NCBI GenBank assembly: GCA_016748015.1
Contig: JAAOMT010000009.1
Span: forward strand, 142,459-206,458
Origin: Geosiphon pyriformis uo1
Taxonomy: Eukaryota > Fungi > Glomeromycota
Length of the DNA: 64,000 bases
Direction of reading: 5' to 3'
Part shown: positions 2,268-50,093 of the stretch, piece by piece
Layout: the number at the start of each line of letters is the position of its first letter
Position numbering within the stretch: position 1 is the stretch's first letter
Position numbers and translations under genes: made by a program
The notes under the pieces: generated by a model
The model's database searches: none
Seen by the model: the letters and a program-made list of their open reading frames with translations, nothing else
Told to the model about the DNA's origin: nothing

Positions 2268-2308
2268 TATAAAAGCTCTTCTCTTTCTAACTTCCTAAAA
2301 AGTTCATC
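2268..2308 (+). promoter_or_regulatory. Putative core promoter: TATAAAA (2268-2274) plus TTCATC initiator-like motif (2303-2308)
   Basis: The same motif pair at similar spacing precedes the genes at 12025 and 23006. Confidence 0.45.
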
Positions 2309-2350: not shown

Positions 2351-3418
2351 ATGACGTTGGGCAAATACAATTACCTCTCTAGATTAGCCTGTATTATTCT
2401 CTTGGCTACAACATTGAATACAACTGTTCTTGCTACAATAGGACGCAGACTTCAAGTTCGTGGTAATTTCAACGGAAACGGTAACGGTAACAGAAATATT
2501 GGAAACTATAATGGAAATAATAATGGCAACAAGAACAAAGGCTCTTTCAATGGTAACAACAACGGTAATTTCAACTTTGGCTCCTTTAATGGCAACGGCA
2601 ACGGCAATCGCAATGATGGCTGGTTTAATGGAAACAGCAATGGTAACGGCCGTCACTACTACTTAAGATCAAGTTATATGAAACGAGATGGAAATGGAAA
2701 TGGAAACGGAAACGGAAATGTTGGTAGTGAAAATGGAAACGGAAATGGAAACAATGATTCTGGTTCAAACAACGGTAATTTTAACGGCAATAATAATGAC
2801 AGCTCTGGTAATGGAAATTCAAACGGAAACAATAATGTTGGAAGTGGATATGGAAACTTTTACGGCAATGGCAACACTAACGTAGGACAAGTTTCTAACC
2901 AAGACAATGGCAAGATTGATGCAGGACAGGTTCCCACTCAAGGCAGCGCGGGTAGCGGAAACAATAACGGTAATGGTAATATCGGTATTTCCAACAGCAA
3001 CACCAACAGCAACAGTAACAACTATAACAATGGGCCATTATGGGGTTCATACAGAAATTTCAACTACCCATATTACCCTGCATTCTTCTCATATTACCCA
3101 GTATCATATTGGCCATGGGTATTTAGCAGTCATTATACAACTGCAGGTACTTTTCAAAGATGGCTAACTGATCATTATGATGTTGATTTTGCAAAATGGT
3201 CTACTTCTTATCAAAATAATGCTGATTTCCAAAAATGGCTTACCACACATCAATTTGAGCAAAACGATTTTGAAAAATGGGTCCTCGGGTTTTGTAATAT
3301 ACCTTCCATTTCAAAGTTGGAAAGCACCACATGCAATGGATATGAACTTAAGGATTTGAAACTGATTTATGAGATCCTTTATGGGTTTACCGGTTGGTCA
3401 AGTTGGGGCCGAAATTAG
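2351..3418 (+). CDS. Secreted Gly/Asn-repeat precursor protein with dibasic (Kex2-type) sites, 355 aa, intronless (paralog 1)
   Basis: ATG in AAAATG context; hydrophobic N-terminus (LACIILLATTLNTTVLA); RR at 2444-2449 and KR at 2681-2686; 13-aa G-[NS]-[FY]-NGNxNGNxNx repeats; non-repetitive aromatic C-terminal region; TATAAAA at 2268; clear paralog at 12025. Confidence 0.85.
   Translation: MTLGKYNYLSRLACIILLATTLNTTVLATIGRRLQVRGNFNGNGNGNRNIGNYNGNNNGNKNKGSFNGNNNGNFNFGSFNGNGNGNRNDGWFNGNSNGNGRHYYLRSSYMKRDGNGNGNGNGNVGSENGNGNGNNDSGSNNGNFNGNNNDSSGNGNSNGNNNVGSGYGNFYGNGNTNVGQVSNQDNGKIDAGQVPTQGSAGSGNNNGNGNIGISNSNTNSNSNNYNNGPLWGSYRNFNYPYYPAFFSYYPVSYWPWVFSSHYTTAGTFQRWLTDHYDVDFAKWSTSYQNNADFQKWLTTHQFEQNDFEKWVLGFCNIPSISKLESTTCNGYELKDLKLIYEILYGFTGWSSWGRN
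2462..3034 (+). repeat. Coding 39-nt/13-aa Gly-Asn tandem repeat arrays, split by KR
   Basis: GNFNGNGNGNRNI/GNYNGNNNGNKNK/GSFNGNNNGNFNF/GSFNGNGNGNRND/GWFNGNSNGNGRH, then a looser second array after the KR. Confidence 0.9.
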
Positions 3419-4326
3419 AGTTACCTTGTAACTAGAAAGTTTTTATAATCACCCATAGAAACTCCTGAATGGTCTTTAAAATCCCACCTTTTTTGTAAAG
3501 AGATAGAAAGAGAGAGAGCGAGAGAAATAGTAATGATACAGGAAAAAACTTTAATCTAGAATTGTAAATAATTTCTGAAATATTTTAAGTTCCTCTTTTT
3601 GTTATTTCTTAATGAATAGTGCTCTTTCTTTGCAAAAAATTAATCAGAAGCGATATTCGTAATTTCTTTCAAAAGATTAATGAAATAAAGGTCTGTGACC
3701 ATTTATATTCGAACCAAATTTATTTCAGGTAACGCGTGGTGAGCCGAATTGAGGTGAATTTTTTATTAATATCTATTGTTACACTAACCGCCCTACATCA
3801 TTTTATGGTCACTGATTAAACGTTTAAAAGCACTCATTATCCCTTGAAAATTTTGAACCCTATTCAAAGAAATCATTTTCACGAAGATAATTTCTTGCGC
3901 GCAAAATAAGTTTTAACGTTAATAAAAGTTGATATATGGTTACTTAACGACAGATTTCAGTAACGTTAGTTTTATTAAAAACAGGCCTCTTAATCAAGAT
4001 TTTATAGATGTCAAAGGAGAACGTTTATTTCATAATCTTTAATCTCTCGTTAGATCATAGAATTTTTGAGGATAAGAACGCTTTTATCGATATCAGGAAT
4101 GTATGCGTTTTGCATATTAGAATAATAATTCTTTGAGTGTTAAGTTGCTTACAAAGAAAATAATTTTTTTAATTTTGTCCAAGAGCAATTATGACATCAT
4201 GTCTTGCTTGGAGGTGTGTTTTGGATCATTATTCTTCTGAAATACCCACGGGTGCCTATATTTTCTGGTTGCATTTTGATAAAGTTAGTTGTTTAATATT
4301 TCGATATGATGATTCAAATTATCCCT

Positions 4327-4700
4327 TTAATATATGAAAATCAAATTTACCACGTTCGTTGATCGTGCAGCTTGAAGGGTGCTTTGCCATTGGTAACATA
4401 GGTTGTCCATCATGCTAACATGCCAAAAAGGTGTTTCGGAACATCTGCAAAGTTGTTTCGTTGGAGAATACCACCTTATACCAGTTATAATGACGATGTT
4501 TACGCGCCCATTTCTCCTTGGAGCTTTCGGTGATAAGAGGGACAGGCTTGGCAAAATGGCAATGCACCCAAGCCTTGAAAGCTTTCCCTGAATAGTTCAT
4601 TCGCTAACCTCGAAGCCCGGAGACGTTTCTTCGAACTGTGCTTTGATCTTGACTCCCGCAACGAAATATTCATACACAATTACTATGAATATCCGAGACT
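4327..4700 (-). pseudogene. Tc1-family transposase fragment
   Basis: KPVPLITESSKEKWARKHRHYNWYKVVFSNETTLQMFRNT aligns by eye with PMLTEEHKRKCVEWAKKHLNDD(W)KRTVFTDETSF-LFQNT of the Tc1 at 19.5 kb. The first catalytic D is changed to N. Boundaries approximate. Confidence 0.7.
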
Positions 4701-6682
4701 GTACCTATTTTTATTTATTATGGCTAAAATCACATTGATTGATTTTGCTCACAAGCATTTTTTATATCAAGATAAATTAATTGTCTTTGAATAGTGAACA
4801 ACTCCTCTCTAAATTGCCCTTTAAAAGGAAAGCAAGCTTTTGAGCGTTTTTACTCAGGTATAAGTTGGATGATTTATTACTAACATGCTAGGCCACGATC
4901 CTAAAAGTTTGTTCGAAGCTTAAATTCTAAATATTTTTTGTGAACTTGTGAAAGTTTGATGTTTGGTATTAATATATGTTTTTAGTTTTTGACCAATGAT
5001 TTCGATATTATCCCCTTCTTCAGATTTACAGCATATGTGAAAGCAATCTTGAATTTTTTTCAATAAAAAATGTAAGATATTTCTTTTTCTAATATTCAAT
5101 TTGGGAATGAATGAATTTTTTTATTTGAAAGTTTGAAACATATTCTGATCACTAATAAATTGTATAATCCTTCCTGGCTTCAATTAATGCCTCAACTCGA
5201 TTTTTCATAATTGTACTTTTAATTCCAAAAAGCATATAAACAGATGGAAGAAGACCTTGTTTGTGTATTTTAATTATTGGAAGCGAATCAGTTTACCAAA
5301 ACCTGAAACTAAAAAATAACAGATCAGAATAATAATGTTTTTGTGCAGAAAGCTGCCAAACTTTTAATTTTGTTTAATTTAGACGAAATATGCTTTCATC
5401 TGAAAATATAACGTTTTTTTTGTGTTTGTTGGTGAGTAAAGGTCAACCATGTAATTAGCTTCATGTAAAACTTCATTTCCCGTTGTATATCAATGTGGTT
5501 AGATCAATAACTTTTTTTGCAAGTTGTACAATTTTGGCATCTTGCTTTGGGTTGTAATTCAATTTCGGACAAATTTTGGTTGGTCACTTAGGTCTTTTGT
5601 TTCCTCCCACCTTTTTAATCCAATAAAGTGCTGTAAACTTTTACTTGATGAATATAAAATATTTGATATAGAAAATCTATCAAAGGTATTTTTTGTCTTA
5701 GGGCTCCAATTTGATCTACAAAGCGTTATTGGGGGGAGGGTTTTTATCAAATTTTTCGACACGAATTTTTAAATGATACACAAATACAAAAAATGTGTAA
5801 TTTTTAATACGAAAAACAAAAATCATTTAGGTTCTTCATTTTAGGGAAGCAGTTGACGAAAATTATTTAAAATGAAATAATTGATTTAAATAATAATGTA
5901 AAACGTTATCGTGAAATGGAATATGAAAGAAGTATATTCATTTAATATTTAAAAATTTATTTCTTAAAATGATTTTTAAATATGAGTTTTTAAAATATCC
6001 ATCACTCACAAATGGAATTAAACAAAATTGATAATAAAATAAACGTTAACAATCATACATAATTATATTCTAACCTAGATTTTGATAGAAATATAAATAG
6101 GATTTATAAAGTAAAGGAAAAAAGTTTATATTAGTAATTTAACCAATAAATTAATTTAAAATTTTTCTTGTATCATCGTTTTTTGTCGTGTTTTTCTGAT
6201 CCTAAAAATTCTAACCTCTCAAGGCTCACAGACACATTCCAATAAAAATTTGTAAGTCACCCCAACTTTTTCTCCACTCCTTCAGCGGTGAGAGAATTCG
6301 ATCAATTAGCATCCCAACACTTTTCAATTAGCTCAGATAAGCGATACAAGGTAGAAGATGATGATTTCAGAGGAAGATCATGAAAAGGAGGCTTTCTTGT
6401 CATCACATCCCATAACATCATCCTTTTGGGTAATATAAATATCACCAGCTAATGTGAGCCTTTCTCCATTTAAAACTTCTGGGAAAAATTTATGGAACCC
6501 CTCCAATTATTGTTTTTTTCGGCTGCTTGTTTGATTGTTTGCTTGTTTGCTGTTTTACTATTGGCAGGTTGACTTAATTTGTGGTCACGAATTTTTACAT
6601 CATTTGAATAATATAGGTCACGATGCAACATGAATTGCATCAAGTTCATATACAAAAACAATTAATTTTTTTAATAAATTTA

Positions 6683-7784
6683 GGGAATGGCTAAATCGAC
6701 CCACCCCCATCATGTGTTATCATTTACGTCATAGTTTCGTATTCAACTATATATAGGAACATATTAACGAGTTTATAATCAAAGAGCTCTAGAATAAACT
6801 TAATAAGTTTTCTTTTGATTTTACAAGTAATTACATCTTTTTATAAAATTACAAATTATATTCATATGATGTTACCACCTCCAGAAACATCATATAGCTC
6901 TTGTGAGATGATTATACAAAGTCTTAACATCTTTACATACTCCCAAGGATATTTAGTTACAAAACGATGCTCTGCTGCTAATGGTACTCGTATTACCTTC
7001 AAATGTGATCAGAAAAATGAATATAATGCTTCTAAAAGACTTGTATTAGAAGATCGACAATGAAAAACAGCAACTCGATTAACAAACTGCCCTTTTCCTG
7101 TATATGGACGATTACTCGAAGCTGATGAATGCTGGCATTTAACTCGCAATGCTGAACATAATCATGAGCCATCTGATAATATTGCTGAACATCCTACTGC
7201 TCGATGACTTAAATCCAAACAGAAAGTATTAGTTTCACAAATGTTAAAGTGCAGGGGTTGCGCCAAAGGCAATTTTAACAGCATTATGACAGGAAGATCT
7301 TGAACAACATGCAATTTCAAAGACTATTTATAATGAACAGGCACATCTTCGAAAAATAGACTCAATTAATTCAGATTTCAACCACATCTCTTGCAATTGA
7401 GAATCCTTTTAATCAACGAACTCGAGGACGTTCTTTAGGTGCTTTAAATCGCTCTAAACAAAATATTGCTCATCAAGAATCATCTATTCAACAAAATTTA
7501 TCCCAATTTGAAATTGTTGGAAATGTTTCTTCTCAAATTCAAGTACGTAAATGTAAAATTTGTAAGAAACAAGGCCATAATATTCGGGACTTGTTCACAA
7601 CGAAGTGTTTTTTAATTATAAAACACTATAAATTACTTAAGGCATAATAAAAAATTAAATATTTAATCTATAGTATTTTTTATTTTAATAAAACTAATAT
7701 TTATTAGAATTACTAATAAATAAATATTAAAATTCTATATATATTAATATCACGTGTTGCGGGTGGGTCGATTTAGCAATTCCC
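6683..7784 (+). mobile_element. Internally deleted Mutator-like (MULE) DNA transposon, 1102 bp
   Basis: Imperfect TIRs of about 34 bp (GGGAATGGCTAAATCGACCCACCC... / ...GGGTGGGTCGATTTAGCAATTCCC); 8-bp direct repeat TAAATTTA on both flanks; FAR1/WRKY-GCM1-like remnant (FKCD..TRLTNCPF..W..HNH) and C-terminal Zn knuckle (RKCKICKKQGHN); no DDE core visible. Confidence 0.85.
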
Positions 7785-9539
7785 TAAATTTAAAGGTCTC
7801 ATGTAAATTCGAAAATTTTTTTATTAATTCCATTATTGGATCTTTTTGTCAACGAGGTTTTCAATTTTTCATTAATTCATAAGCGATAAATTAATAGAAC
7901 AAAATTTTTACTTTATTTTCATTAATTGAAACAACAGATTTTTTTAATGTCTTTTTGATTTAAAATAATCAAATAAATAAATTTAAGTAATTTATGTTCA
8001 AAATCATAAATCTTTAATTAAAAATGTATCTATATTTTCAAGATAAAGATTTGTACAACAAAAAAGTTTTTTTTTATCGCTTTTATGAATCCACAACCAA
8101 GTTAAAAATCATTATTTTTTTAAAAAATAAATTATTTCATCAATCATATGTTAAGATAAAAAATAGAACTTACTAGAATATGATGGGTTTACTTTAGATT
8201 TAAAATTAATTAATATTTTACTGATATCTCAAAATTTGAATACTTGATTATACATGTAAATGAAAAATACATGTGTAAATTTTCTAAAACTAGAAAAGAA
8301 TGCCCAAAATTGTATTCATATATGTACTACAATTTAGTGATTAAAGTTTCCTAATTTTTTCGTATATCAATCTTGTTCGAATACATGTATTATTACCACC
8401 GAGACAAGGATTCTATTTCACGTTTTGCGAAAGGGTGTGCTAACTTAAATAACCATCACGAAACATTGATTTTATCATGAGATAAATTAATTAAATATGA
8501 AAAAAAAAGCAGGGTCATTATATTTTAGGAATTTGTAATAGGGAGAGCAGAGCATCATACGCAAGATTTGACAATACAATATGAATTAGCATCGAAAATA
8601 ATTTTTCAGAATATTTGTAATTACGATAATTGATTAGTAATTGAAAATATTAATCACTTGATTTTTTTTTAAATGAGAGGTTCTGAATGTTTTAAAAAAT
8701 TGGAAAAGTACTTTTTCTTTTTTATATTACGAATGCAAGGAGATTGATAATGAATAAGATCTTGATCTTAATCGCAAAACTTTTCAAAATTTAAAAATGT
8801 AGGCCAATTTTTGAATCAAATTCCTTTACCATCAACTCAACAATAGGGAGACACTTTAAGCATCTTGTAAAACACCAAAACAAAATGAAATTCAAGTAAC
8901 TGGAGGGAAGAAAATATGACCTTTACAAACTTACTTTTGGAGGCATATGTGGAAAATCAACTCTTTTAGAATGATGAAGGTATAAAACATATAGTGACTC
9001 ACAAAAGTCATGTCCGTGATTGAAGATAAAAATCTCTCGCCAAAATATATATTTTGTACATATATCGATCAATATAGAATATAAGAATATAAGTCAGGCT
9101 TTCAGATCTGTGATTTATTTCTTTTTAGAATTAGAACTGTTAAATGATTTACATAGTAACGAATACGGCATTCATTTTACTTATTCGCGAATATCCATGC
9201 TGATACCTCACCTTTATCCTCTTTCCTAAGTTAAAGTCTCAAAATGCTGATACCATCATTTCCTTCTTCATTACCTCTGCTACCAAGAAAGGTTACCTCC
9301 ATGCCCAATTCCCAACATACGAGCTCATTAGCGATATTTGCTCCGGCATCAATTTAAAGCATCCAGGGCTTAACACCCTACTCGAATGATCAACCTACAG
9401 TGCTTTCTCCGAGGTTGCCATGGAAGGTAGGAGAGCTTCTCGCTACTGAAGAGAATTCAGGAACAAAAACCACAAGAAAAAAGGAAAGGCAACATTCATG
9501 GCAAATGCCAAAAAATGAAGGACAATCTCAACTGCATAC

Positions 9540-10563
9540 TACTAGTCAAGATGTATCCAAACCATCCTCAGAAGCGGCTATTGAACACTGGGTAGGATGG
9601 AGCGAAAGGTGTCGCATCATTATGACACAAGATGGTATCATAAAAAAGGGGATTATTAAGACTTATGATGCTTCAAAGAAAACATCCTTTTAATGATGTT
9701 TCGGCTATCTGGAATGAAAGAAAATTTTGCAGAACCATGGTTCGTCTTGGCATAATCTTAAGAGGTTGCTTAAGCTCAGCTCCTACCTACCAAAATCACA
9801 GACGAAACATTGCTTGCGGGAAAAGAAGTTATTAAACGTGATACACACCGAGAGCAAGGTGCAGCAACAGATTATCTTTCTTTTCAATATCGTAAGACAC
9901 TGTATCACAACATAATAATTCGTGCTCAGAATTTTGTCAAGTTGCCTTGGAATCGCTTCTAAGGATAATAAATTTTTTATGCTTTTTTTTAAATTGTTAT
10001 ATCAATATTTGTGCCATTATTTTTAAGGATAAACAACTATGGTCTTCTACTTCGAAAAAAAAAACGTGAAAATAACAGTGGCCCTGTTCATACAGTTTCC
10101 ATTAATTCTGGTATTCCCCTCTAAAGGTGTAGGTGAAATCGGGGAATATAATATTGAACATATTGTTCGTCTTTGCACTTGCACCTATATGGGATAATTG
10201 ATATCACGAAAAGAAAGATTCTCTCAGTCAACATCCAAACGCAAGAAAAAGAAGGCTAGAAGATTCGACAAAGCAGTCTCATGTACGCGAAGAAAAATTA
10301 TGCATTTGCAAAACAAAATCCACAAAATGGCAATTGCATTCTTCATTCATGAATTCGACGTTATCATCATCCTGCCGTTTGATGTTTCTAACATGGTGGA
10401 TCGAAAAACAAGAAAATTACGCGAAAACTGGTCCAAGAAATGCTTTCTTGGGCACATTATTAATTTCGCCAACGCTGAGGAATTCGGAGTGTGTGTCATT
10501 GTCCAGAGTGAGGCTTATATGTCCAAGACTTGTAGCTGGTGTGGTAACGTCAAAGTATCGTAG
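9540..10563 (+). pseudogene. Decayed Fanzor2 (eukaryotic TnpB/IS607-OrfB-like) nuclease gene
   Basis: N-terminal KMYPNHPQKRLL/EHWVGWS (OrfB HTH-like); VSINSG at 10095-10112 (degenerate xDPG RuvC-I); WYSP.KGVGEIG..IVRLC; basic helix; IILPFDVSNMV; EAYMSKTCSWCG. Frameshifted and truncated before RuvC-III. Confidence 0.75.
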
Positions 10564-11944
10564 GTATCTTTCTATAATTACCAATTCCTAGTACAGTAAG
10601 TGCTCACCCTTAGGACCAAATAGGATTAATGCACTTAGAGAGAATATGCACTTAAAGAATAGCCAATAATAAACATACATAGCCCATATACATGTCTACA
10701 GTACACGTGACTACCTAAACAAGATTTACTACTTAACAAACAATTGGAAACTTCTAATTGGTAATTAGAGAGTATTCAGAATATAGAGGATATGCACTGT
10801 ATTGGCTATTATTGACGCAGTCCATGGTATGGGTGAGAAAATCGAAACTTTGGTGGTAGGATTGATTGCTCTCAAATTGGCGAAAAGGTTTACGCCTTCC
10901 TACCAAATATCATTATACAATGCACTATTTGAGAGAAGTTTGACCAAAGTTAGAAAGAAGTTGCTTCTTAGATTAAACTATACTTTGAGAATGATCCAAC
11001 CTCAAGAGTTAAAAAGGGAATTCAAAGAAATTGAGCAAGAATTAAACAGAGAGAGAGCTGAAATCAAGCATAAGATCACCTATGTGAATAATTTCAACAA
11101 CGTCAGGAATAAAAGCGATTATAATTTGGATACAAAAGGAGGAAAATAAATAAAAGATTTAAGGTAATGACATCTTAAACTACATTTGAATTCAGATATT
11201 CACTTTGTCTGATTTTGTACGAAATAATAGATCCAATATTGTTCAAATTCAATTATAATCAAAATCTAGAGTTAATGCAGGCACAAACATGTAAATTTTT
11301 CCAAATTTGGGGGTAGACAAAGAAAGAAACCTTTGACAATAGAACAACATTTCTTGAAATTACGTTAATTTGAGAAACTTAGTAATTTTCATTCTCAATG
11401 GATGAGGCTTGGAAGTGAAATTACCCAAACGATAAAGTCGAGCTTTACATCAGAAAACTATGCAAAAGAAAATTTTAATTCGTTCAAGTATGTATACAGA
11501 TAAGCCATTTTTAGTCACAGGAAAACCATAGGCAATTTAAAATTTTTCCTATTCAAAACCTGTCTTTTCTGGAATAGAACATTTTATCATTGAATCGAAT
11601 GAAAATCTTTTCCCAAAATAAGAAAATCTCAAAACACAGCCTGATTTAAAAATGTACAGGTATATGTATATGTACATTTTAGGATATTTTCCCAACAAAA
11701 ATATTCATTGGCAATATGATCAGAATAGGCATGAATTTCAGTGAGCCTCTTTTGAGAAAATCAGGTCAATTTAGTTCCCTTGAAAATTTTTTTTCGTCAG
11801 AATTTGACAATGAAAATTAACAAAAATGGCAGAACTTATAGTCATCTTTATGAGCATTTAGTATTACGATAGAGCATTGAAACATAATGAAGCCTTTTCC
11901 GGCGTGTATTCTTGAAAAATTCTTCGGTTTGACCGGAATTCCTT

Positions 11945-11979
11945 TATAAAAACGAGAGCCCTCACAAAAGTTTTTCATC
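11945..11979 (+). promoter_or_regulatory. Putative core promoter: TATAAAA (11945-11951) plus TTCATC (11974-11979)
   Basis: Lies 80 nt upstream of ATG 12025; same arrangement as at 2268 and 22932. Confidence 0.45.
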
Positions 11980-12024
11980 AGCCAAACTCAAAGAATTAAA
12001 ACAATCTACGACTTGATTAAAAAA

Positions 12025-12759
12025 ATGATGGTTAGATTTGCTATTCTTTCAGTAATCGGATTCCTAGCCTTAGTGGCAACTCCTTTCGCTGCCGCTCTAC
12101 CAGAAATTGAAAAGCGCCAGAATTTCAATGGTAATGGTAACGGAAATGGTAATGTCGGCAATTTTAATGGCAACGATAATGGCAATGACAATGCCGGTAG
12201 CTTTAACGGAAATGGTAACGGCAATGACAATTGGGGTTCTTTCAACGGCAACCACAATGGAAATGGAAATGGCTACTGGGGTTGGGGTTGGGGTTGGGGT
12301 TGGCCTTATTATGGTCATGGTCATGGTCATGGTCATTACAAACGTGATTTCAATGGTAATGATAACGGAAATGGTAATATCGGCAATTTTAATGGCAACG
12401 ATAATGGCAATGACAATTGGGGTTCTTTCAACGGCAACCACAATGGAAATGGAAATGGCTACTGGGGTTGGGGTTGGGGTTGGCCTTATGGTCCTTATGG
12501 TCCTTATGGTTCTCATGGTCCTCATGGTCCTCATCATGGTCCTTACAAACGTGATCACAATGGTAATGGTAATGGAAATGGTAATGTCGGCAATTTTAAT
12601 GGCAACGATAATGGCAATGACAATGCCGGTAGCTATAACGGAAATGGTAACGGCAACTACAATTGGGGTTCTTTCAACGGCAACCACAATGGAAATGGAA
12701 ATGGCTACTGGGGTTGGGGTTGGGGTTGGCCTTATGGTCATGGTCATGGTCGTTGGTAA
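12025..12759 (+). CDS. Secreted Kex2-processed repeat precursor (KEP-like), 244 aa, three GN/WG/His modules (paralog 2)
   Basis: First ATG is at 12025 (the ORF track starts at an upstream TTG). Signal peptide MMVRFAILSVIGFLALVATPFAAA, pro-piece LPEIEKR, KR at 12112, 12340 and 12547 separating three homologous modules. Confidence 0.92.
   Translation: MMVRFAILSVIGFLALVATPFAAALPEIEKRQNFNGNGNGNGNVGNFNGNDNGNDNAGSFNGNGNGNDNWGSFNGNHNGNGNGYWGWGWGWGWPYYGHGHGHGHYKRDFNGNDNGNGNIGNFNGNDNGNDNWGSFNGNHNGNGNGYWGWGWGWPYGPYGPYGSHGPHGPHHGPYKRDHNGNGNGNGNVGNFNGNDNGNDNAGSYNGNGNGNYNWGSFNGNHNGNGNGYWGWGWGWPYGHGHGRW
12118..12756 (+). repeat. Nested coding repeats: three modules of about 210 nt, each with 39-nt GN units, (TGGGGT)n and (GGTCAT)n or 9-nt GPY/GPH units
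   Basis: Read directly from the DNA and its translation. Confidence 0.92.
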
Positions 12760-30264: not shown

Positions 30265-33200
30265 TTATGCTGTCGCAGGCTTGACTATCCTAACAACTAA
30301 ATCACCTGTCGATAATGAATCATTTTTTTGCACTGCCACATACTCAACCTTACCTGAAACAGGTGATGTGAGTACAGTTTCCATTTTCATGGCTGAAAGA
30401 ACACATATTGGGTCACCGACTTTTACGTCTGTTCCCTCTAAATTAGAGGCAAGAGATAATAAAATTGATGAGAAAATTGAAAAGGTACTGGCTTTTTAAA
30501 GGAAATTTGTTCTAATAGGATATTTAAGAATATGATGAAAAAATAAGAACCTGTTGTTCTGACTTCAATCACAACACCAGACATAGGGGCTCCTATTTCA
30601 CCAGGGTTGCTTGGATTTGCTCTTTCACGTTGAACATGATCCACGGCTTGAAATATAAGAGTTAAATATTAAAAAAAATTCACCGGATTTAGTCGATTGA
30701 AACTTAAATTTCATTAAATTTACCAGCATTACGATCATCGATCGCTAGGGCTCGAGCCTCTCCATTTAACTCGAAAAAAACCTCTCTCTTGCCCGTTATG
30801 ACATTTAGAGGACCGGCAGCTAAGAACTTGATCATTAGGGTAACTCCTTCTTCAATCTGAATGCTGACTTCTTCGCCGATTTCAGGCTTCGCTAAAAAGT
30901 AACGTGTAGGAACCACGGAAAGATCACCATATTGATCAACTTTTTCTCGATATTCAGCGAAAACCTGCGGGTACATCGCGGCAGAGGATACATCAACATC
31001 ACGAATGCTACGTCCGTATTTTTGTGTTAATTCGACTTTAAGTTTAAACAGATCCAACGGTTTCATGGAGGCTCCAGGTCTTCCATCTATACGTGGAAGA
31101 TCACGAATAATCTATAAAAAAATTATGTATGATCATCTGCAAAAATATCTAAAAGGAACAAGATTATAACGAAATCTTGTTTCTCTGAACATCAGCTGTT
31201 AAAATAAATTGAAAATACATCAGATCGAAGTGGTTCTGGGAATCCTCCATAAGGCTGCCCTAGGTGCCCTTGAAAAAATTCTACCACTGATACAGGGAAC
31301 GATAACGTCTTTGCTTTTTGAATGACCTATTTGAAAATTTTGTTTTAATAAAATTTACATAAATGAGAGACAATCAACAAATAGTTTTGTACTTACATCA
31401 AAATATGTCAACTTATTTGATACCATAAATTGAGCAAGATCGCCAACAACTTTAGAGCTCGGCGTGACTTTTACAATATCTCCGCATAATTTATTGGCCT
31501 CTACATAAGCTCTCTTGATCTCTTTCCACATCTGTCCAAGGCCGAGTTGTTGCGCTTGAAACATGAGGTTGGTGTATTGACCCCCAGGCATTTCATGTTC
31601 ATAAACGGACGAGTCAGCAGCTAAAACGCCAGATTCAAAACAACTGTAAAGCATGCGAACTTGCTCCCAATATCCATTTAAGGCATGGACATCTTCCAAT
31701 CGGATGCCGGTTCCAAGATTCGTATTTTCAAGAGCAGAGACAACAGCACCCATCGATGGCTGGGATGTAATACCAGACATACCTTGATCGCAAAAAAATA
31801 ATAGTATCATAAGTATCGGTTTCTTATTTCTCCTCAATACATCACCCTTAGATAACAAATTTATAAACTTACTATCTATAGCCAAATCAATAATATCAGC
31901 ACCAGCAGCGGCAGCGGCGAGCATACTGGCTACACCCGTTCCGGCTGTATCATGGGTATGGACATGTATTGGTAAATCAGGCCAACGACTCCTAATGGCA
32001 CCAACAAGGATTTTCGCAGCCTCAGGTTTTAATAATCCAGCCATATCTTTGATTGCCAGGACGTGAATTCCTTCATTGATTAATTCTTGCGTCAAATTCA
32101 TATAATAGTCAAGGTTATGTTTCTTTTTATTAGGGTTGGATAGATCGCCTGTATAACATATAGCCGCCTCGACAACACCACCCGCTTTCTTGACAGCGTC
32201 AATCCCAAGACGCATGTTTTCTATATAATTGAGGGAATCAAATATACGAAAAATGTCCATTCCAGTGTCTTTAGCTTTTTTACAAAAATCATATATTATA
32301 TTATCTGGGTAGGATGTATAGCCGACAGCATTGGCACCTCTTAGCAACATTTGAAAGGGAATGTTTGGCACCAAAGCACGCATTTTTGCCTAAGTTTTAA
32401 ATTATTAATAAAGCTTGACAGTTAATGTTTTTGATTTGAACTTCCTTAAGGGCCTACCAAACGATCCCAAGGATCTTCATACAAAAATCGCATTGCAACA
32501 TCAAATGTTGCTCCACCCCAATTTTCTAAAGCATATGCATTTGCAAGCCCATGAGCAGTTTGTGGAGCGATATTTAAGAGATCTGGAGATTTCGATAATC
32601 ATTAGAATGGGGGGAAAATCAGAGATTGAAACTCACCATTTCTCATACCTATTGTTCTTACTCTAGTTGCCAATAAACTTTGATGTGCATCTCTCCAAGT
32701 GGTATCCATAATAAGGACGCCATTATATCGACGCACTGCTTTGGCAAAAGCTTCGGGACCTTGTTCAATTAGAAGATGCCGCCATCCATGAGTGGGAGGA
32801 TGCCGAATATCTACTGGTTCTGGCCCGGCCAATGAACGGATCATTGGTAGGAGAATGGATTGTTTAAAGTTTGGCTCACCCTGTCAAGAAAGTTTGTATA
32901 ACTGAAATTTAAGAAATCCGAGGACACCAAATTAAAGCAATTTGGTTGAATTACATCAACCCGCATCAAAGCTTTGACTCACAATCTGTCCTTTGATACT
33001 GCTACCATTGACTACTAAATCACCTAAATATTTGAGGATTTTTTGCGCTCGATTTTTACTCCCCACTAATTTAAACAAATCTGGCGTATCATCAATAAAC
33101 GTCGTCCATGTCCTTCCAGTCAAAAATATTTCATGTGTTAATAATCTCTGTAGAAAAGGTAAATTTGTTTTGACTCCACGAATTCTGAATTCTACTAATG

Positions 33201-35331: not shown

Positions 35332-37571
35332 TCAAGTGATTGGGTCAAATTTTCTATCAATAAACGAGGTTATCTGAGGGTTCTGTTTTTTTTCTGTGCT
35401 AATACGCAAGCGTGGCCAATCATCAGGAGCCTTCTGAACACCTAGATTTTTATCAAGTATTTTATTGATCTCCCACATCAAAATGCTGCCTGCAGATGAG
35501 ATGTCCATAATACCATCAACTTCAGTTGTTGAGATCCCAACTTTCATTGCTTGCAATGCAAATTCTGGAATATGAGCAATTCTGCGACTCAAATAGAGAG
35601 CGATGCGTGAGGGAAGGGCACCAGTATACTCTTTACGAAAGGAAGAAGTCCAAAAAAGCAAATTAGTGCCCTTTATGATGGATGTTGATTTATTTTTTAT
35701 TTCTGGTGGAATGACCCCAGCAGTAAGAAGAGATAATTCGTTTTGTTCTAAAAAGGTCAAAAGATCTTCATGATTTCCGTATACACATGGCCATGTAAGC
35801 GAATGGAACCCAGAAGAGCGCATTACAAAATCATTATAAATATCGTTCGTTCTAGGTCCCATAAAGGACCCCTGCCATCCAAAAGCTTTTGCACTACGAA
35901 TCAACATGCCAAAATCTATGGCCTCGTTTGCACTGTCCAGTACCAGCAACCTATTAATCTCGTTTTTTTCAGGCATTTGAATAACAGGAAATGGAACCTC
36001 CGCAAAGATCTCATGACGATCAGGTTTAGCGGCGCTTCCTAAAATCTTGCGTGCCATATCAATACTTGCTATGTAATAATTTTCCGCCTTAATGAGTTGT
36101 GGATTTTCAATATAATCTAAAGCTGGAGATTGAATTTCGTATTTCGACTTGGGTTTATCAGGAGCGTGAATAATCAGACTTTTGATTGGAAAATTTTTCA
36201 AAGCTAAATCTCGCACATTTACTTCGTTTTGGACAATAACCAATTTTTGCTGATGCCGATAGGCTTTATCTTCAACAAGTTTTTCAAGGTGCATTATGAT
36301 AGGATCTGTTATTCCATGAATGCGTGTCAACATTTTGGGCCACTCATGCTTGTATTGAAATTTTTCTCTATAAGCTTCTCTTTCTGCTGCCTCACGAACT
36401 TTAGCCATTTGTTCTTCATGAGTTAGTGGCCTTCGTATGGGAAAGGTACGACGGGAGCTTTGGTCAGTTCTGTCATGTCGAGGAAAGCTATGTCTAAAAG
36501 AAGGAGAATGAGAGTTATAGGTTTCTTGTGGTTTTTTCTGCTTGATAAAAAGATGAGTTTCATCATATCGTTTGTCCACACGCTCCTTTCGATCATCTCC
36601 AGCAAGTGTCGGAATCATAGAGTTTGTTAAAGATAATTGCCTAGATCGAGAGTTGTACTTGTTATGGTTATGTTGCTTGTAATACATATCATATTTTGGC
36701 TTACTGCCTCTAGCTCCCAAATAATTGACGATATGCTCCCCTTCAACCTTAGGATAAGCGCTTTCGGATACTGGACGATAAGCATTGATAAAAGAGTTAT
36801 TAAATTGATTTGTTTTGGGCCGAGTATTTCGAGAATCAGGATAAACTCCTTTCGGGTCTGTATTGTATTTCAGTACATTATTGGTATGAGGTTTTTGATC
36901 ATATTCTTTATGAGAAGAGTTAAGGTGTCGACCTTGGGGACGCTGGTATTCTGGATCGGGAGGATTAAAATATAGGGGTTTTGTGGCTGAAATAATAGAA
37001 GACAAGTGTGGCTACACGTTAACAAAAAAAATATATAGGTTTTATATCATTTCATTGACTTGAGAATTAAAACCTTGAAATCGATATTCTCCCCAACCCT
37101 ACCTCTAAATTTAAGGCCATTACTAACAAAGTTTTCTTCAGACAAGGTGTCAAACTTTTCAGAGCTAAACTCCATATTATTCCAAGATGCCACTTTTTGA
37201 GGGATTCCATTGTTAAAACTTTTGAGCCGTGGTTGAAGATTCAAATTTCTATAATGGAAGTTTCTCTGTGGGTCACTTCTATATTGACTTCTCTGCTCAC
37301 GATAGTTCTCTTCGCTTTTAAAAAAAATTGGAGTATTTTCTCGATAATTACGCTCTCGTGCATGGTTGGCAGGTGAATCTCTAAACGATCCTCTTTCAAC
37401 GTTATCTTGACTTGAATTTTTGGCCTGTAATTTTCCCCCACTTCTACGCTCGGGAACATAGAAGACTCTTTCCTCAAAATGCTTATGGTTTCCTATATGA
37501 AAGAATCTCAGAAATATATGTTTCTTGTAGGTTTTCACTTCGAAAGGTATTTGTGCTTGCCTTCGTAGCAT
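35332..37571 (-). CDS. SpoU/TrmH (SPOUT) RNA methyltransferase-fold protein, MRM3/RNMTL1-like, probably mitochondrial, 725 aa; exons 37571-37074 and 37011-35332
   Basis: A phase-0 62-nt GT-AG intron joins the two ORFs. Arg-rich presequence-like N-terminus. LLVLDSANEAIDFGMLIRSAKAFGW, DIYNDFVMRSS and IMDISSAGSILMWE resemble SpoU motifs. Confidence 0.75.
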
Positions 37572-48600: not shown

Positions 48601-50093
48601 TTTCAGAAAAAGTCAAAAGAAGAACACCTTTTGATGCAGCATATAACAGTGCTCTCAACAAACTTTATCACTACCTCCATGATGCTGAGATGATTTTCGA
48701 CTTAGCAATGGCATTAATTAATGGAGCTACCAAAGAAGATGTTTGTCAAATAAAGGAAGCAGAATACATTGAATACACCATAGAATTAGCTAGATTTGAT
48801 TACGAAGACGAAGTAGAAGTCTACCACCAAATTGCAAGTCACACCTACCCAACCCAAGAAGCTCAAATTCAATAATTAAAGCAAATGAACATTAGGCTAT
48901 ATAAAGAATGCATTATGCCTTGTGATGAACAGTGGTGTCCTGAATGCTATGCTCTTAGCATCTCCTTGCCCAGCAAAAGTGATGAGAACGAAATTGAATT
49001 TGGAAAACCTGAAGCCATGGAAAAAATTGAAACAACACCCATCTATTTTATTGAAAATCAGCCTGTTTTACAACTCAAATACTTCAACAACAACGGGCAA
49101 GGAATAAAACCTGAAAAAGCACACAAAATTGATGCTGGATATGACCTAAAATATTCAGATAAGGATACTCTTGTTCTCCAACTCAAATCTCTCACAAAAA
49201 TTAACCTCAAAATTGCACTCAAAATCCCACCAGGAGCAATGATTCAAATCGCCTCCCAGTCCTCTCTGGCAAGCAAAAGAATCAATGTCAGAGGAAGAAT
49301 AATCGATGCTGGATATACTGGAGATATTACAGTGATGCTTCAAAACAAAACTGACAAACCATTCAAGATTGAACATGCTGAAAAAATTGTCCAAGCTATT
49401 TACCTACCCCTAATCAACATTTCGGGTTTGCAACTAGTCAATCAAAGAGAACAATTAGGAAAAAGCGATAGAAGAACCCAAGGTTTTGGTTCAACTGGAC
49501 GATTCACAGTTCCAGTTAATATAGCTCTTAATACACAGAATGAATTTCACCAGATTTTCAAACTTTCACAACCAATTACCATTTCACCCTTTGGAGAACA
49601 TCTGGAAATCTACACTTGTCCAAAGCCAACAACCACACAACAAATTTTTGAGTCCAATGAACAAGTCTGCTTGGAACATAATATTTCGATCCCAAACATT
49701 TATATTCCAGAAGGAACAAAAAAAATCTGAGTTACTTTTTACAACCCCAATAATTACCCCCCAATATATAGATATTTCTATATTAGAAAAACACTTCATG
49801 AGCAAAAACTAGAGCTTACAGCAGCAAACCTCACAAAAAAAGCTATTCAAAAACAACTTCACAATGAATTCAAGACAACAGCTGGACCTACAAACAGTCA
49901 TTATAAACTAAGAGCTGCTCTTAGACTTTATGACCTATTTCACACCTGTGAAAATGTCCTACAAAACCCAATTTTACAGCCTTTGAAGATTCAATACATT
50001 GGAAAGCTCACAGAACTGAAATTTCAACAATTTTCAGACCAAATTTTTTCAATAATTTTGGATTACTATCTGGAAATTACAGACAGTACTTGA
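45678..50093 (+). pseudogene. Element B polyprotein interrupted by point-mutation stops
   Basis: Retrotransposon capsid (46386-47099), Zn knuckle CHYCGISGHWKRDC, protease LILDSGSA, Cys-rich region, dUTPase (DAGYDL..IIDAGYTG..GFGSTG, about 49070-49500) and an in-frame C-terminal domain ending at TGA 50091-50093. Confidence 0.85.

What the first reader, a model, noticed from the sequence alone, without database searches (positions are those of the whole stretch)
2351..12759. Candidate new system: a linked pair of secreted, Kex2-cleavable precursors built on a strict 13-residue Gly/Asn repeat
Seen: two same-strand, intronless genes 8.6 kb apart, separated only by TE debris and unassigned DNA. 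Each has a signal peptide, a short pro-piece, dibasic sites and arrays of the same 13-mer G-[NS]-[FY]-N-G-N-x-N-G-N-x-N-x, followed by aromatic blocks. Period and register are conserved although the rest of the proteins has diverged. Established: signal peptide plus KR-separated repeats defines fungal Kex2-processed repeat proteins, whose products are usually short peptides; alternating Asn favours Asn ladders in beta-solenoids and cross-beta fibres. Inference: a family of secreted self-assembling peptides (functional amyloid, wall or spore coat, adhesive, or ice-binding material). I do not recognise this repeat as a described family.
Basis: partly seen in the sequence, partly recalled or inferred. 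Interest (0 to 1): 0.88.

Follow-up and report, generated by a model that had tools for sequence, protein, structure and literature searches.

The report
Two secreted Asn/Gly coil-repeat genes
These are two real but unannotated genes of the fungus Geosiphon pyriformis. They belong to its large, already named family of secreted asparagine/glycine repeat proteins, so they are not a new two-gene system, but the same strict 13-residue unit also occurs in many soil bacteria, which is not in the literature I could search.

Summary
Gene A (2351-3418) and gene B (12025-12759) are intact same-strand ORFs. Each has a signal peptide, dibasic sites, in-register 13-residue G-x-x-N-G-N-x-N-G-N-x-N-x units and aromatic blocks. 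The period is far above chance (z 8-9.5).

The "new linked pair" reading is not supported. The genome is Geosiphon pyriformis, shown by an exact protein match. The unit gives 61 matches genome-wide, and A and B are not each other's closest kin. The family is already in the literature as GpRIC / "GN-rich IDPs", with KR sites noted. This scan has also met it before on other DNA of this genome.

B meets the published definition of a Kex2-processed repeat protein (three ~7-8 kDa peptides). A does not.

Three points go beyond the one paper I could read and a few keyword searches:
- The paper did not recognise the 13-residue period.
- It called the family Glomeromycotina-only, but the same unit occurs in at least 120 bacterial and archaeal loci, mostly Hyphomicrobiales, and in an ascomycete hydrophobin.
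- AlphaFold gives a low-to-moderate-confidence 13-residue-per-turn beta-solenoid for B, while a single module alone stays unstructured.

Function is unknown. My best guess is stackable wall or matrix peptides.

The parts
2268..2274 (+). TATAAAA box 83 nt upstream of gene A's ATG
   Evidence: In 14 of 26 family genes TATAAA lies 50-130 nt upstream of the ATG, with a mode near -80, against an 11% background.
2351..3418 (+). Gene A, intact 355-aa ORF including the stop; an unannotated member of the RIC / GN-rich family
   Evidence: The exact protein is not in the 15-billion-protein collection. No Pfam or NCBIfam hit.
2351..2434 (+). Gene A predicted signal peptide (aa 1-28; the cleavage site is approximate)
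   Evidence: Inspection: basic n-region, hydrophobic core LACIILLATTL, VLA at -3..-1. SignalP was not available.
2435..2461 (+). Gene A pro-piece with RR and the motif R-L-Q-V-R directly before the first unit
   Evidence: The same R-L-x-V-R-G motif occurs in the neighbouring family gene L021.
2462..2686 (+). Gene A first Asn/Gly array (aa 38-112): five 13-residue units, a basic aromatic tail and KR111-112
   Evidence: The predicted 73-aa peptide has pI 10.3.
2687..3046 (+). Gene A second, degenerate Asn/Gly/Ser region (aa 113-232). It opens with the family's first-rung motif directly after KR
3047..3133 (+). Gene A aromatic Tyr/Pro/Trp/Phe block (aa 233-261)
3134..3415 (+). Gene A non-repeat C-terminal domain (aa 262-355) with three D-F-x-K-W motifs and two Cys
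   Evidence: No Pfam, PDB, homologue or Atlas match. The only relative is a decayed copy of gene A at G000:C701 about 78.6 kb.
10198..10560 (+). TnpB/Fanzor-type transposon remnant in the spacer; not part of either gene
   Evidence: Weak match to Pfam Cas12f1-like_TNB, E 5.8e-4, below the curated cut-off.
11945..11951 (+). TATAAAA box 80 nt upstream of gene B's ATG
12025..12759 (+). Gene B, intact 244-aa ORF including the stop; an unannotated precursor of the Kex2-processed repeat type
12025..12096 (+). Gene B predicted signal peptide (aa 1-24, ending AAA)
   Evidence: Inspection. SignalP was not available.
12097..12117 (+). Gene B pro-piece LPEIEKR, ending in the first KR
   Evidence: Other family members have similar leaders ending in x-E-K-R.
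12118..12345 (+). Gene B module 1 (aa 32-107): four 13-residue units, Y(WG)4WPY, a (GH)4 tail and KR
12346..12552 (+). Gene B module 2 (aa 108-176): three units, Y(WG)3WPY, a Gly/Pro/Tyr/His tail and KR
12553..12756 (+). Gene B module 3 (aa 177-244): four units, Y(WG)3WPY and a GHGHGRW end
12274..12309 (+). Trp-Gly block of module 1, encoded by a perfect TGGGGT hexamer repeat. The blocks of modules 2 and 3 lie at 12460-12489 and 12706-12735
   Evidence: No relative of the tail in 5.8 billion proteins. The other (WG)n loci of the genome are non-coding.

Best explanation
Genes A and B are two unannotated members of the large family of secreted Asn/Gly repeat proteins of Geosiphon pyriformis. The family is known as GpRIC, or as "GN-rich IDPs" in Ambispora and Paraglomus.

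Both proteins should enter the secretory pathway through an N-terminal signal peptide. In the late Golgi the fungus's kexin should cut B after KR31, KR107 and KR176. That removes a 7-residue pro-piece and releases three peptides of about 7-8 kDa. Each peptide has three or four 13-residue Asn/Gly units, a Trp-Gly block and a His/Gly/Pro/Tyr tail.

A should be cut once or twice, after RRLQVR and after KR112. That gives one basic 73-residue Asn/Gly peptide and an acidic 27-kDa C-terminal protein that carries a private non-repeat domain.

The 13-residue unit most likely forms one turn of a very narrow beta-solenoid or beta-roll, with Asn ladders. Turns from the same peptide or from different peptides would stack in register, so the released peptides would act as building blocks of an extracellular or wall-associated fibrous or coat material. 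The aromatic and His ends would act as caps, cross-linking sites or metal-binding and adhesive handles.

Shown: the genes, the leaders, the dibasic sites, the period, family membership, and a kexin gene in the genome.
Inferred: secretion, cleavage, the fold, stacking and the material role.

The confidence given is for the whole chain. Gene status and family membership alone are about 0.9, Kex2 processing of B about 0.6, and solenoid stacking into a material about 0.35-0.4.
For: Genes and repeat.

Organism:
- A G000-encoded ORF is identical to KAG9291474.1 [Geosiphon pyriformis].
- The contig of KAG9292817.1 has exactly the length of G000:C580.
- The assembly statistics match.

Family:
- 61 matches in the genome.
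- Period 13 is the top or second lag in 26 of 27 catalogued paralogues (in the exception, L004, a 32-residue module period comes first).
- The same unit plus KR is present in Amlep_AGL4/5 and Pabra_AGL2, as printed in the supplement of PMC8786786.
- GpRIC1-3 made up 22.3, 5.0 and 3.0% of cDNA-library reads.

Processing:
- Modules start just after KR or the leader with a special first unit. Position 11 is Gly in 39 of 45 first units, against 20% of all units.
- Modules mostly end in Y, W or H just before KR: 52 of 75 sites.
- B gives 4 fragments with 3 similar repeats, which is the published KEP rule.
- The genome holds one kexin-type gene, with a P-domain at 53 bits, a TM segment and an acidic tail.

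Promoters: TATAAAA lies at -83 in A and -80 in B, as in the rest of the family.

Fold:
- AlphaFold2 of full-length B with a 74-sequence alignment gives pLDDT 60-71 on the Asn/Gly arrays, with beta-bridges recurring every 13 residues.
- The best structural matches are almost all beta-solenoids: Ag43 Z 9.9, TibA 9.5, LpIBP 8.2, MpAFP 8.0 with rmsd 2.4 over 139 residues, TmAFP 5.3, CsgA 5.3.

Constraint: the same unit and first rung, placed behind a Sec signal peptide, occur in at least 120 bacterial and archaeal loci and in a Microdochium hydrophobin. This argues for a structural constraint and against mere compositional bias.
Against:
- A single B module folded with 29 sequences gave pLDDT 34 and no secondary structure.
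- The full-length model is only pLDDT 57 and pTM 0.44. Z scores of 8-10 lie near the tool's stated background of 7-8, and Foldseek found nothing significant.
- The literature reads the family as intrinsically disordered.
- The Trp-Gly and His tails are encoded by perfect microsatellites and have no relatives anywhere, so they may be recent, unconstrained slippage products.
- No assembly or nucleator machinery of the curli type lies next to the bacterial genes.
Confidence: 0.45

Rival explanations
1. The proteins are intrinsically disordered, very hydrophilic Asn/Gly polymers, which is the literature's reading. They would act as an unstructured hydrated matrix, lubricant or phase-separating coat around hyphae or the symbiotic bladder. 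The 13-residue period would be only a trace of how the array grew by duplication.
For: Schultz et al. 2022 class them as GN-rich IDPs. Only G, N and a few other residues are used. AlphaFold of one module gives pLDDT 34, and the tails stay below 50 in the full model.
Against: - The period and register are the same in paralogues that share little else, in Ambispora and Paraglomus, and in bacteria and archaea.
- The invariant positions use mixed codons.
- The first and last units are specialised.
- Unstructured Asn-Gly is the most deamidation-prone dipeptide (established peptide chemistry, from memory). With 30-35 NG per protein, a disordered form would be chemically short-lived.
Confidence: 0.25
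2. The released peptides act singly as bioactive molecules. They could be signals to the cyanobacterial partner or to other hyphae, or Gly/His/Trp-rich antimicrobial or metal-binding peptides, with the Asn/Gly part serving as a soluble carrier.
For: - KEPs usually yield bioactive peptides.
- Each B peptide carries 4-5 His and 12-14 aromatic residues, concentrated at its C-terminal end.
- Poly-His tails recur on 8 of 96 bacterial relatives.
- Gly/His-rich plant and insect antimicrobial peptides exist (from memory, not tested).
Against: - At 67-74 residues the peptides are much longer than typical KEP products.
- The conserved part is the Asn/Gly array, not the tail, which has no relatives and is microsatellite-encoded.
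- Family members reach 22% of cDNA reads, which suits a bulk material better than a signal.
Confidence: 0.15
3. The family is an extracellular nitrogen store or sink. Asn is nitrogen-rich, and the fungus lives with N2-fixing Nostoc.
For: Asn makes up 22-24% of the residues. The RIC name links the family to the cyanobacterial symbiosis, and expression is very high.
Against: A store needs no strict 13-residue register, no first-rung motif and no Kex2 modules. The same unit occurs in AM fungi that have no cyanobiont and in many free-living bacteria.
Confidence: 0.05
4. One or both ORFs are not functional genes. They would be open frames kept open by chance in Asn/Gly-coding repeat DNA, or young pseudogenes.
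For: Repeat DNA of this kind is open in several frames and on both strands. Neither gene is annotated. Gene A has a decayed duplicate.
Against: - Only the forward frames carry a signal peptide, dibasic sites at module borders, family first-rung motifs and a TATA box at -80.
- A's 128-residue non-repeat C-terminal part is open, while its duplicate has accumulated stops and frameshifts.
Confidence: 0.04

Closest known systems
[quoted passage not shown] 2022, PMC8786786)
   Same: Same species or subphylum. ER signal peptide, more than 15% each of Gly and Asn, and KR sites read as Kex2 sites. By my reading of the printed sequences, they carry the same 13-residue unit and first rung.
   Different: - A and B are not among the named or annotated members.
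- B adds Trp-Gly and His tails found nowhere else.
- A adds a private C-terminal domain.
- The paper reports no tandem repeat for these proteins and calls the family Glomeromycotina-only. Both statements are contradicted here.
- I could not align A and B to MH580277-9 themselves because those sequences are not held.
Kex2-processed repeat proteins (KEPs; Le Marquer et al. 2019, PMC6339444), e.g. alpha-factor-type precursors
   Same: B has a signal peptide, a pro-piece and three similar modules separated by KR, and a kexin is present in the genome.
   Different: The modules are 67-74 residues long and are themselves internally repetitive, whereas typical KEP peptides are short. There are no Ste13-type dipeptides after KR. 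A has only one internal KR and fails the rule of at least 3 repeats.
Narrow beta-solenoid ice-binding and antifreeze proteins (TmAFP, LpIBP, MpAFP) and autotransporter beta-helices (Ag43, TibA)
   Same: They are the best structural matches to the AlphaFold model of B. They have short regular coils, and the ryegrass protein has internal Asn ladders. TmAFP has 12-residue coils (from memory).
   Different: No sequence relation. There are no Cys or Thr ladders and no Ca2+-binding Asp motif. The model confidence is low and Z is near background, so this is a resemblance of fold class only.
Curli CsgA and other functional amyloids
   Same: Secreted Asn/Gly/Gln-rich imperfect repeats that stack as a beta-solenoid. 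CsgA is a weak structural match at Z 5.3.
   Different: The repeat is 13 residues and not about 19-23. There is no Pfam curlin match, and no csgG/E/F-type genes lie beside the bacterial relatives.
Uncharacterised bacterial and archaeal small secreted Asn/Gly 13-mer proteins (Mesorhizobium, Methylobacterium, Devosia, Aureimonas, Pseudaminobacter, Bradyrhizobium, Methanosarcina and others)
   Same: Identical unit and register, a G-N-G-N-G-N-G-N-[IV]-G first rung directly behind the signal peptide, 45-65% raw identity to B in the family alignment (up to 72% to a single B module), and occasional His tails.
   Different: They have a Sec signal and no Kex2 modules. They lie next to two-component regulators and, in some loci, HlyD/ABC exporters. 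There is no Pfam or NCBIfam model. Whether the likeness reflects common descent or convergence cannot be settled with sequences this simple.
Mycobacterial PPE-MPTR repeats (Pfam Pentapeptide_2, NxGxGNxG)
   Same: An Asn/Gly-rich short periodic repeat. A second protein encoded beside the bacterial 13-mer genes matches this Pfam model at the cut-off.
   Different: The period differs. A, B and the bacterial 13-mer proteins themselves give no match.

Membership tests
Kex2-processed repeat protein (KEP), pipeline rule of PMC6339444 | N-terminal signal peptide, no membrane anchor | tested here: met
   By inspection of n/h/c regions for both A and B. No second hydrophobic segment. SignalP and TMHMM were not available, so this is a manual call.
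Kex2-processed repeat protein (KEP), pipeline rule of PMC6339444 | In-silico cleavage at KR/RR gives at least 4 fragments, with at least 3 fragments of one pattern | tested here: met
   Gene B: a pro-piece plus three similar modules of 76, 69 and 68 aa.
Kex2-processed repeat protein (KEP), pipeline rule of PMC6339444 | The same rule applied to gene A | tested here: not met
   A has only RR32-33 and KR111-112, which gives at most 3 fragments and no set of three similar KR-bounded repeats. A is a pro-protein with dibasic sites, not a KEP.
Kex2-processed repeat protein (KEP), pipeline rule of PMC6339444 | Kexin present in the organism | tested here: met
   One P_proprotein domain hit over the cut-off (53 bits) at G000:C608, followed by a TM segment and an acidic tail.
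Kex2-processed repeat protein (KEP), pipeline rule of PMC6339444 | Peptides actually released | not testable with these tools
   Needs peptidomics.
GpRIC / GN-rich IDP family (Hoffrichter 2018; PMC8786786) | Secreted, high Gly and high Asn, low Pro, from Glomeromycotina | tested here: met
   A: N 22.5%, G 16%. B: G 27%, N 24%, P 4%. The genome is G. pyriformis.
GpRIC / GN-rich IDP family (Hoffrichter 2018; PMC8786786) | Sequence similarity to named members | tested here: inconclusive
   A and B share the unit, the first rung and the KR borders with Amlep_AGL4/5 and Pabra_AGL2 as printed in the supplement, and with the annotated G. pyriformis proteins KAG9291474.1 and KAG9292817.1. MH580277-9 themselves are not held, so no direct alignment was made.
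GpRIC / GN-rich IDP family (Hoffrichter 2018; PMC8786786) | Expressed (the named members are abundant cDNAs) | not tested
Beta-solenoid / beta-roll repeat proteins | Each repeat forms one coil, with coils stacked in register by parallel beta-bridges | tested here: inconclusive
   AlphaFold2 of full-length B: beta-bridges every 13 residues, pLDDT 60-71 on the arrays, overall 57. Nearly all top VIA matches are beta-solenoids, Z up to 9.9. A module alone is unstructured, and Foldseek finds nothing significant.
Curli-type functional amyloid | Curlin repeat (Pfam) and dedicated csgG/E/F-type export and nucleation genes | tested here: not met
   No Pfam match. The bacterial relatives' neighbours are response regulators, kinases, HlyD/ABC and a second Asn/Gly protein, not curli genes. 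Amyloid dye binding and fibril formation cannot be tested here.
Hydrophobin | Eight-Cys pattern | tested here: not met
   B has no Cys. A has three (C14, C315, C328). Only the Microdochium relative P0017 carries the Cys pattern.
Ice-binding / antifreeze proteins | Thermal hysteresis or inhibition of ice recrystallisation; a flat ordered ice-binding face | not testable with these tools
   Only fold-class resemblance to LpIBP, MpAFP, CfAFP and TmAFP at Z 5-8.

The most novel reading that the evidence does not exclude
The 13-residue Asn/Gly unit is a single, ancient, self-stacking beta-solenoid module. It is shared by soil bacteria (chiefly Hyphomicrobiales), some archaea, early-diverging Glomeromycotina and at least one ascomycete hydrophobin, and may have moved between them by horizontal transfer. 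Geosiphon has turned it into Kex2-released building blocks of an abundant extracellular Asn-ladder material. Gene B would then be a variant whose Trp/His tails add metal binding or cross-linking.
Probability: 0.3. Interest if true: 0.75.

Novelty: new member of a known kind. Interest (0 to 1): 0.45.

Why it matters
RIC-type proteins are among the most abundant transcripts of the only fungus known to house cyanobacteria inside its cells, and relatives occur in early arbuscular mycorrhizal lineages. Even so, they are treated as featureless disordered proteins of unknown role.

If they are instead built from a strict 13-residue unit that also occurs in hundreds of bacterial secreted proteins, the question changes from "what does a sticky disordered protein do" to "what does this fold build". 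That question is directly testable with synthetic 7-kDa peptides, and with knock-outs in tractable bacteria such as Mesorhizobium or Methylobacterium.

For this particular finding the gain is smaller. It adds two unannotated members, one with unique Trp/His tails and one fused to a private domain, and it removes the idea of a dedicated two-gene system.

Tried and rejected
- **Exact look-ups.** A, B and two neighbouring exons are not in the collection.
- **Family libraries.** Pfam and NCBIfam gave nothing for A, B or the bacterial relatives.
- **Sequence against solved structures.** Nothing for A's C-terminal part or for the family profile.
- **A's C-terminal domain.** No homologue by word-based search and no usable Atlas feature hit. 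The only relative is one decayed paralogue.
- **The search for related loci in genome contigs.** 600 pattern matches, but none passed tblastn, probably because of low-complexity filtering. A period-specific DNA pattern then succeeded.
- **Profile search of 1.84 billion representatives.** Only 72 hits, which I take to reflect HMMER's composition correction and not rarity.
- **Fold searches.** Foldseek against PDB and the Atlas shape search gave nothing meaningful.
- **B's Trp-Gly/His tail.** No relatives. Other (WG)n sites in the genome are non-coding microsatellites.
- **Curli-like operon idea for the bacterial relatives.** Rejected on gene neighbourhood.
- **Literature.** Searches for a described 13-residue Asn/Gly repeat or a bacterial family found nothing. 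I avoided searching papers with the typed motif itself.
- **"Sister gene pair" idea.** Rejected by comparison of the leaders.

Full report

Yes. The ORF list shows a 355-aa ATG ORF at 2351-3418 (+). It also shows an ORF ending at 12759 (+) whose first ATG is at 12025, giving 244 aa. I call them gene A and gene B. They lie 8.6 kb apart on the same strand.

The spacer has no ORF over 130 codons. Its only recognisable content is a weak TnpB/Fanzor-type zinc-finger remnant at 10198-10560 (Pfam Cas12f1-like_TNB, E 5.8e-4, below the cut-off).

Both proteins start with a typical secretory leader, judged by inspection because no SignalP was available:
- B: MMVR, a 14-residue hydrophobic core, AAA, then LPEIEKR.
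- A: a basic n-region, LACIILLATTL, VLA, then RRLQVR.

A has four perfect units G-[NS]-[FY]-N-G-N-x-N-G-N-x-N-x at aa 38-89. A fifth, slightly degenerate unit follows, then KR111-112. After that comes about 120 residues of degenerate Asn/Gly/Ser units, a Tyr/Pro/Trp/Phe block and a 94-residue non-repeat end.

B has KR30-31 followed by three modules (aa 32-107, 108-176 and 177-244). Each module has 3-4 units, Y(WG)3-4WPY and a His/Gly/Pro/Tyr tail.

Identity at lag 13 is 0.43-0.69, against 0.19-0.28 in 2000 shuffles (z 8.0-9.5). Lags 12 and 14 fall to 0.05-0.16.

Inside a module the invariant N and G positions use mixed codons, so the pattern is kept at the protein level. The three modules of B, by contrast, are near-identical DNA copies: 1 synonymous and 3 non-synonymous codon differences in 48 codons. 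The Trp-Gly, Gly-His and Pro-Tyr-Gly tails are perfect or near-perfect micro-repeats.

Both genes have TATAAAA at -83 (A) and -80 (B). Fourteen of 26 paralogues have TATAAA 50-130 nt upstream, with a mode near -80, against an 11% background.

**2. Whose genome is it, and is this a private pair?**

The window is G000:C701:142459-206458 of a 128.3-Mb, 792-contig assembly. Three lines identify it as Geosiphon pyriformis:
- A paralogous ORF that I read from G000:C773 is identical to KAG9291474.1 [Geosiphon pyriformis].
- KAG9292817.1 sits on a contig of 319,635 bp, exactly the length of G000:C580.
- The published assembly statistics fit: 129 Mb, 795 scaffolds, 29% G+C.

Earlier notes of this scan had named the species and the family. 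I checked both myself.

Searching the genome with B gave 61 matches on more than a dozen contigs. From 36 fetched loci I catalogued 31 ORF entries, a few of them the same gene read from overlapping loci, each with at least 2 units and nearly all with a signal peptide. Period 13 is the best or second-best lag in 26 of the 27 I scored; in the exception, L004, a 32-residue module period comes first.

By their non-repeat leaders, A is closest to a family gene 14 kb upstream (L021), with which it shares R-L-x-V-R-G before the first unit. B is closest to a gene on contig C641. A also has a decayed duplicate about 66 kb upstream on the other strand. That copy has stops and frameshifts in the repeat region, but its last ~70 residues are identical to A's.

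So A and B are two members of a dispersed, locally clustered family. They are not a dedicated two-gene system.

**3. What the literature already says.**

Schultz, Wu and Baumann (2022, PMC8786786) describe "GN-rich IDPs" in Ambispora leptoticha and Paraglomus brasilianum. [quoted passage not shown] They note that the KR motifs of these cDNAs may be Kex2 sites.

The sequences printed in their supplement carry exactly the unit seen here, in register and with KR at module ends.

Two things in that paper do not hold up, however:
- Its repeat table lists "none", or 4-9-residue imperfect repeats, for these proteins. The 13-residue period was not recognised.
- It concludes that the proteins occur only in Glomeromycotina.

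**4. The unit is not confined to fungi.**

The first protein search returned bacterial secreted proteins with the same unit, including one from a Rhodopila MAG.

I then used a DNA pattern that demands two units in register. A pure (Asn-Gly)n run cannot satisfy it, because the period is odd. The hits are:
- Mostly Hyphomicrobiales: Mesorhizobium, Pseudaminobacter, Methylobacterium, Aureimonas, Devosia, Bradyrhizobium and Roseiarcus.
- Other Alphaproteobacteria, Bdellovibrionales and a Flavobacteriales MAG.
- Methanosarcina.

The ORFs are small (about 90-250 aa). They have a Sec signal peptide directly followed by a G-N-G-N-G-N-G-N-[IV]-G first unit and then 4-11 units. Eight of 96 end in poly-His. 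Raw identity to B is 45-65% in the 74-sequence family alignment, and up to 72% to a single B module in the 29-sequence alignment.

The fungal modules have the same kind of specialised first unit just after KR. Position 11 is Gly in 39 of 45 first units, against 20% of all units. They mostly end in Y, W or H just before KR (52 of 75).

The profile search also found an Ambispora protein (CAG8643519.1) and a Microdochium bolleyi (Ascomycota) hydrophobin (KXJ90418.1). The N-terminal half of that hydrophobin is made of the same units.

The bacterial genes have no Pfam or NCBIfam model. They tend to lie beside a response regulator (48 loci), a HisKA_3 kinase (25), a second Asn/Gly protein that touches Pfam Pentapeptide_2 (20) and, in some loci, HlyD/ABC exporters. 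No curli-type genes are present. I found no paper describing this bacterial family.

Common descent, including horizontal transfer, cannot be told apart from convergence with sequences this simple.

**5. How it most likely works.**

*Processing.* B fits the published operational definition of a Kex2-processed repeat protein: a signal peptide, at least 4 fragments after KR/RR cleavage, and at least 3 similar repeats. The genome has one kexin-type gene, with a P-domain at 53 bits, a TM segment and an acidic tail. The expected products are three peptides of 74, 67 and 68 residues (7.2-7.9 kDa, pI 5.5-6.0). Each has 9-13 Asn-Gly dipeptides, 12-14 aromatic residues and 4-5 His.

A fails the KEP rule. 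It should give one basic 73-residue peptide (pI 10.3) and an acidic 27-kDa C-terminal protein.

*Fold.*
- A single B module with a 29-sequence alignment gave no structure (pLDDT 34).
- Full-length B with a 74-sequence fungal-plus-bacterial alignment gave pLDDT 57 and pTM 0.44. The Asn/Gly arrays score 60-71, the tails score below 50, and beta-bridges recur exactly every 13 residues.
- An exhaustive structural comparison returned almost only beta-solenoids: Ag43 Z 9.9, TibA 9.5, ryegrass ice-binding protein 8.2, Marinomonas antifreeze 8.0 (rmsd 2.4 A over 139 residues), Tenebrio antifreeze 5.3 and CsgA fibril 5.3.
- These Z values are near the tool's own background, and Foldseek saw nothing significant.

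I therefore treat this as support for the fold class only.

The uncleaved precursor behaves in the model like three stacked peptides. This fits the idea that released peptides stack end to end, and it could explain why a lone module does not fold.

One piece of established peptide chemistry (from memory) also argues for order: Asn-Gly deamidates within days when unstructured, so a protein with 30-35 such sites would be chemically unstable if it were disordered.

*Overall odds.*
- Gene status and family membership: about 0.9.
- Kex2 processing of B: about 0.6.
- Solenoid stacking into a wall or matrix material: about 0.35-0.4.

The rivals are the disordered hydrated-matrix reading of the literature (0.25), single bioactive or metal-binding peptides (0.15), a nitrogen store (0.05) and non-genes (0.04).

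**6. What is particular to these two genes.**

B's Y(WG)nWPY and His/Gly/Pro/Tyr tails have no relatives among 5.8 billion proteins and none among the paralogues. The other (WG)n sites of the genome are non-coding. Because perfect hexamer and nonamer DNA repeats encode them, they are probably young slippage products. Still, aromatic or His residues before KR are the family rule, and His tails recur in bacteria.

A's C-terminal 94 residues (three D-F-x-K-W motifs, two Cys) match nothing in Pfam, the PDB, the protein collections or the Atlas.

**7. Limits.**

- No SignalP or ProP was available.
- A's C-terminal domain was not folded.
- MH580277-9 could not be aligned directly.

**8. Verdict.**

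These are two new, unannotated members of a known, named, functionally uncharacterised family. One is of a well-known precursor type. This scan has already met the family several times on other DNA of this genome.

Three results go beyond the one paper I could read and a few keyword searches: the strict 13-residue unit, its wide occurrence in bacteria, archaea and an ascomycete hydrophobin, and a consistent though weak solenoid prediction.

Noticed in passing
L040-L159 (bacterial and archaeal loci), e.g. L151:2166-4333, L060:5802-6802, L058:3996-5110: There is a widespread, unnamed prokaryotic family of small Sec-secreted proteins made of the same 13-residue Asn/Gly unit. The genes often occur as 2-3 adjacent copies beside a response regulator and kinase pair, a Pentapeptide_2-like Asn/Gly protein and sometimes HlyD/ABC exporters. 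Eight of 96 have poly-His tails. No Pfam or NCBIfam model exists.
   Followed up: partly
P0017 (KXJ90418.1, Microdochium bolleyi): This ascomycete hydrophobin, with its Cys-pattern C-terminal half, has an N-terminal half made of about eight of the same 13-residue Asn/Gly units. The unit is therefore not confined to Glomeromycotina among fungi.
   Followed up: no
G000:C701:~78,500-79,700 (-), locus L038: A decayed duplicate of gene A. The repeat region is broken by stops and frameshifts, while the last ~70 residues of the private C-terminal domain are identical to gene A.
   Followed up: partly
window 10198-10560 (+): A TnpB/Fanzor-type remnant (C-x-x-C zinc-finger motif; Pfam Cas12f1-like_TNB, E 5.8e-4, below the cut-off) lies in the spacer between the two genes.
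   Followed up: no
window 31358-32383 (-), 35335-37005 (-), 48885-49727 (+): These are ordinary fungal gene pieces: a pyruvate-carboxylase-type exon (HMGL-like + PYC_OADA), an ORF with a weak, below-cut-off SpoU methylase match, and a dUTPase ORF.
   Followed up: no
P0005 (KAG9292817.1) versus L034 / G000:C580:249900-255500: The public gene model fuses an unrelated ~350-residue N-terminal part to RIC-type KR modules and has no signal peptide. The locus also holds a run of withheld or masked bases, so the annotation of this family member looks chimeric.
   Followed up: no
Family loci L003, L004, L005, L014, L020, L023 and window genes A and B: The family shares a promoter layout with TATAAA about 80 nt upstream of the ATG. 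Fourteen of 26 genes have the box within 50-130 nt, against an 11% background, which hints at common regulation.
   Followed up: partly
L004, L026, L034 (G000:C773 and C580): Some paralogues interleave the Asn/Gly modules with runs of very short KR-bounded acidic or aromatic peptides (such as D-P-Q-E-Y-K-R and D-E-E-E-K-R). One precursor would therefore release two very different peptide classes.
   Followed up: no
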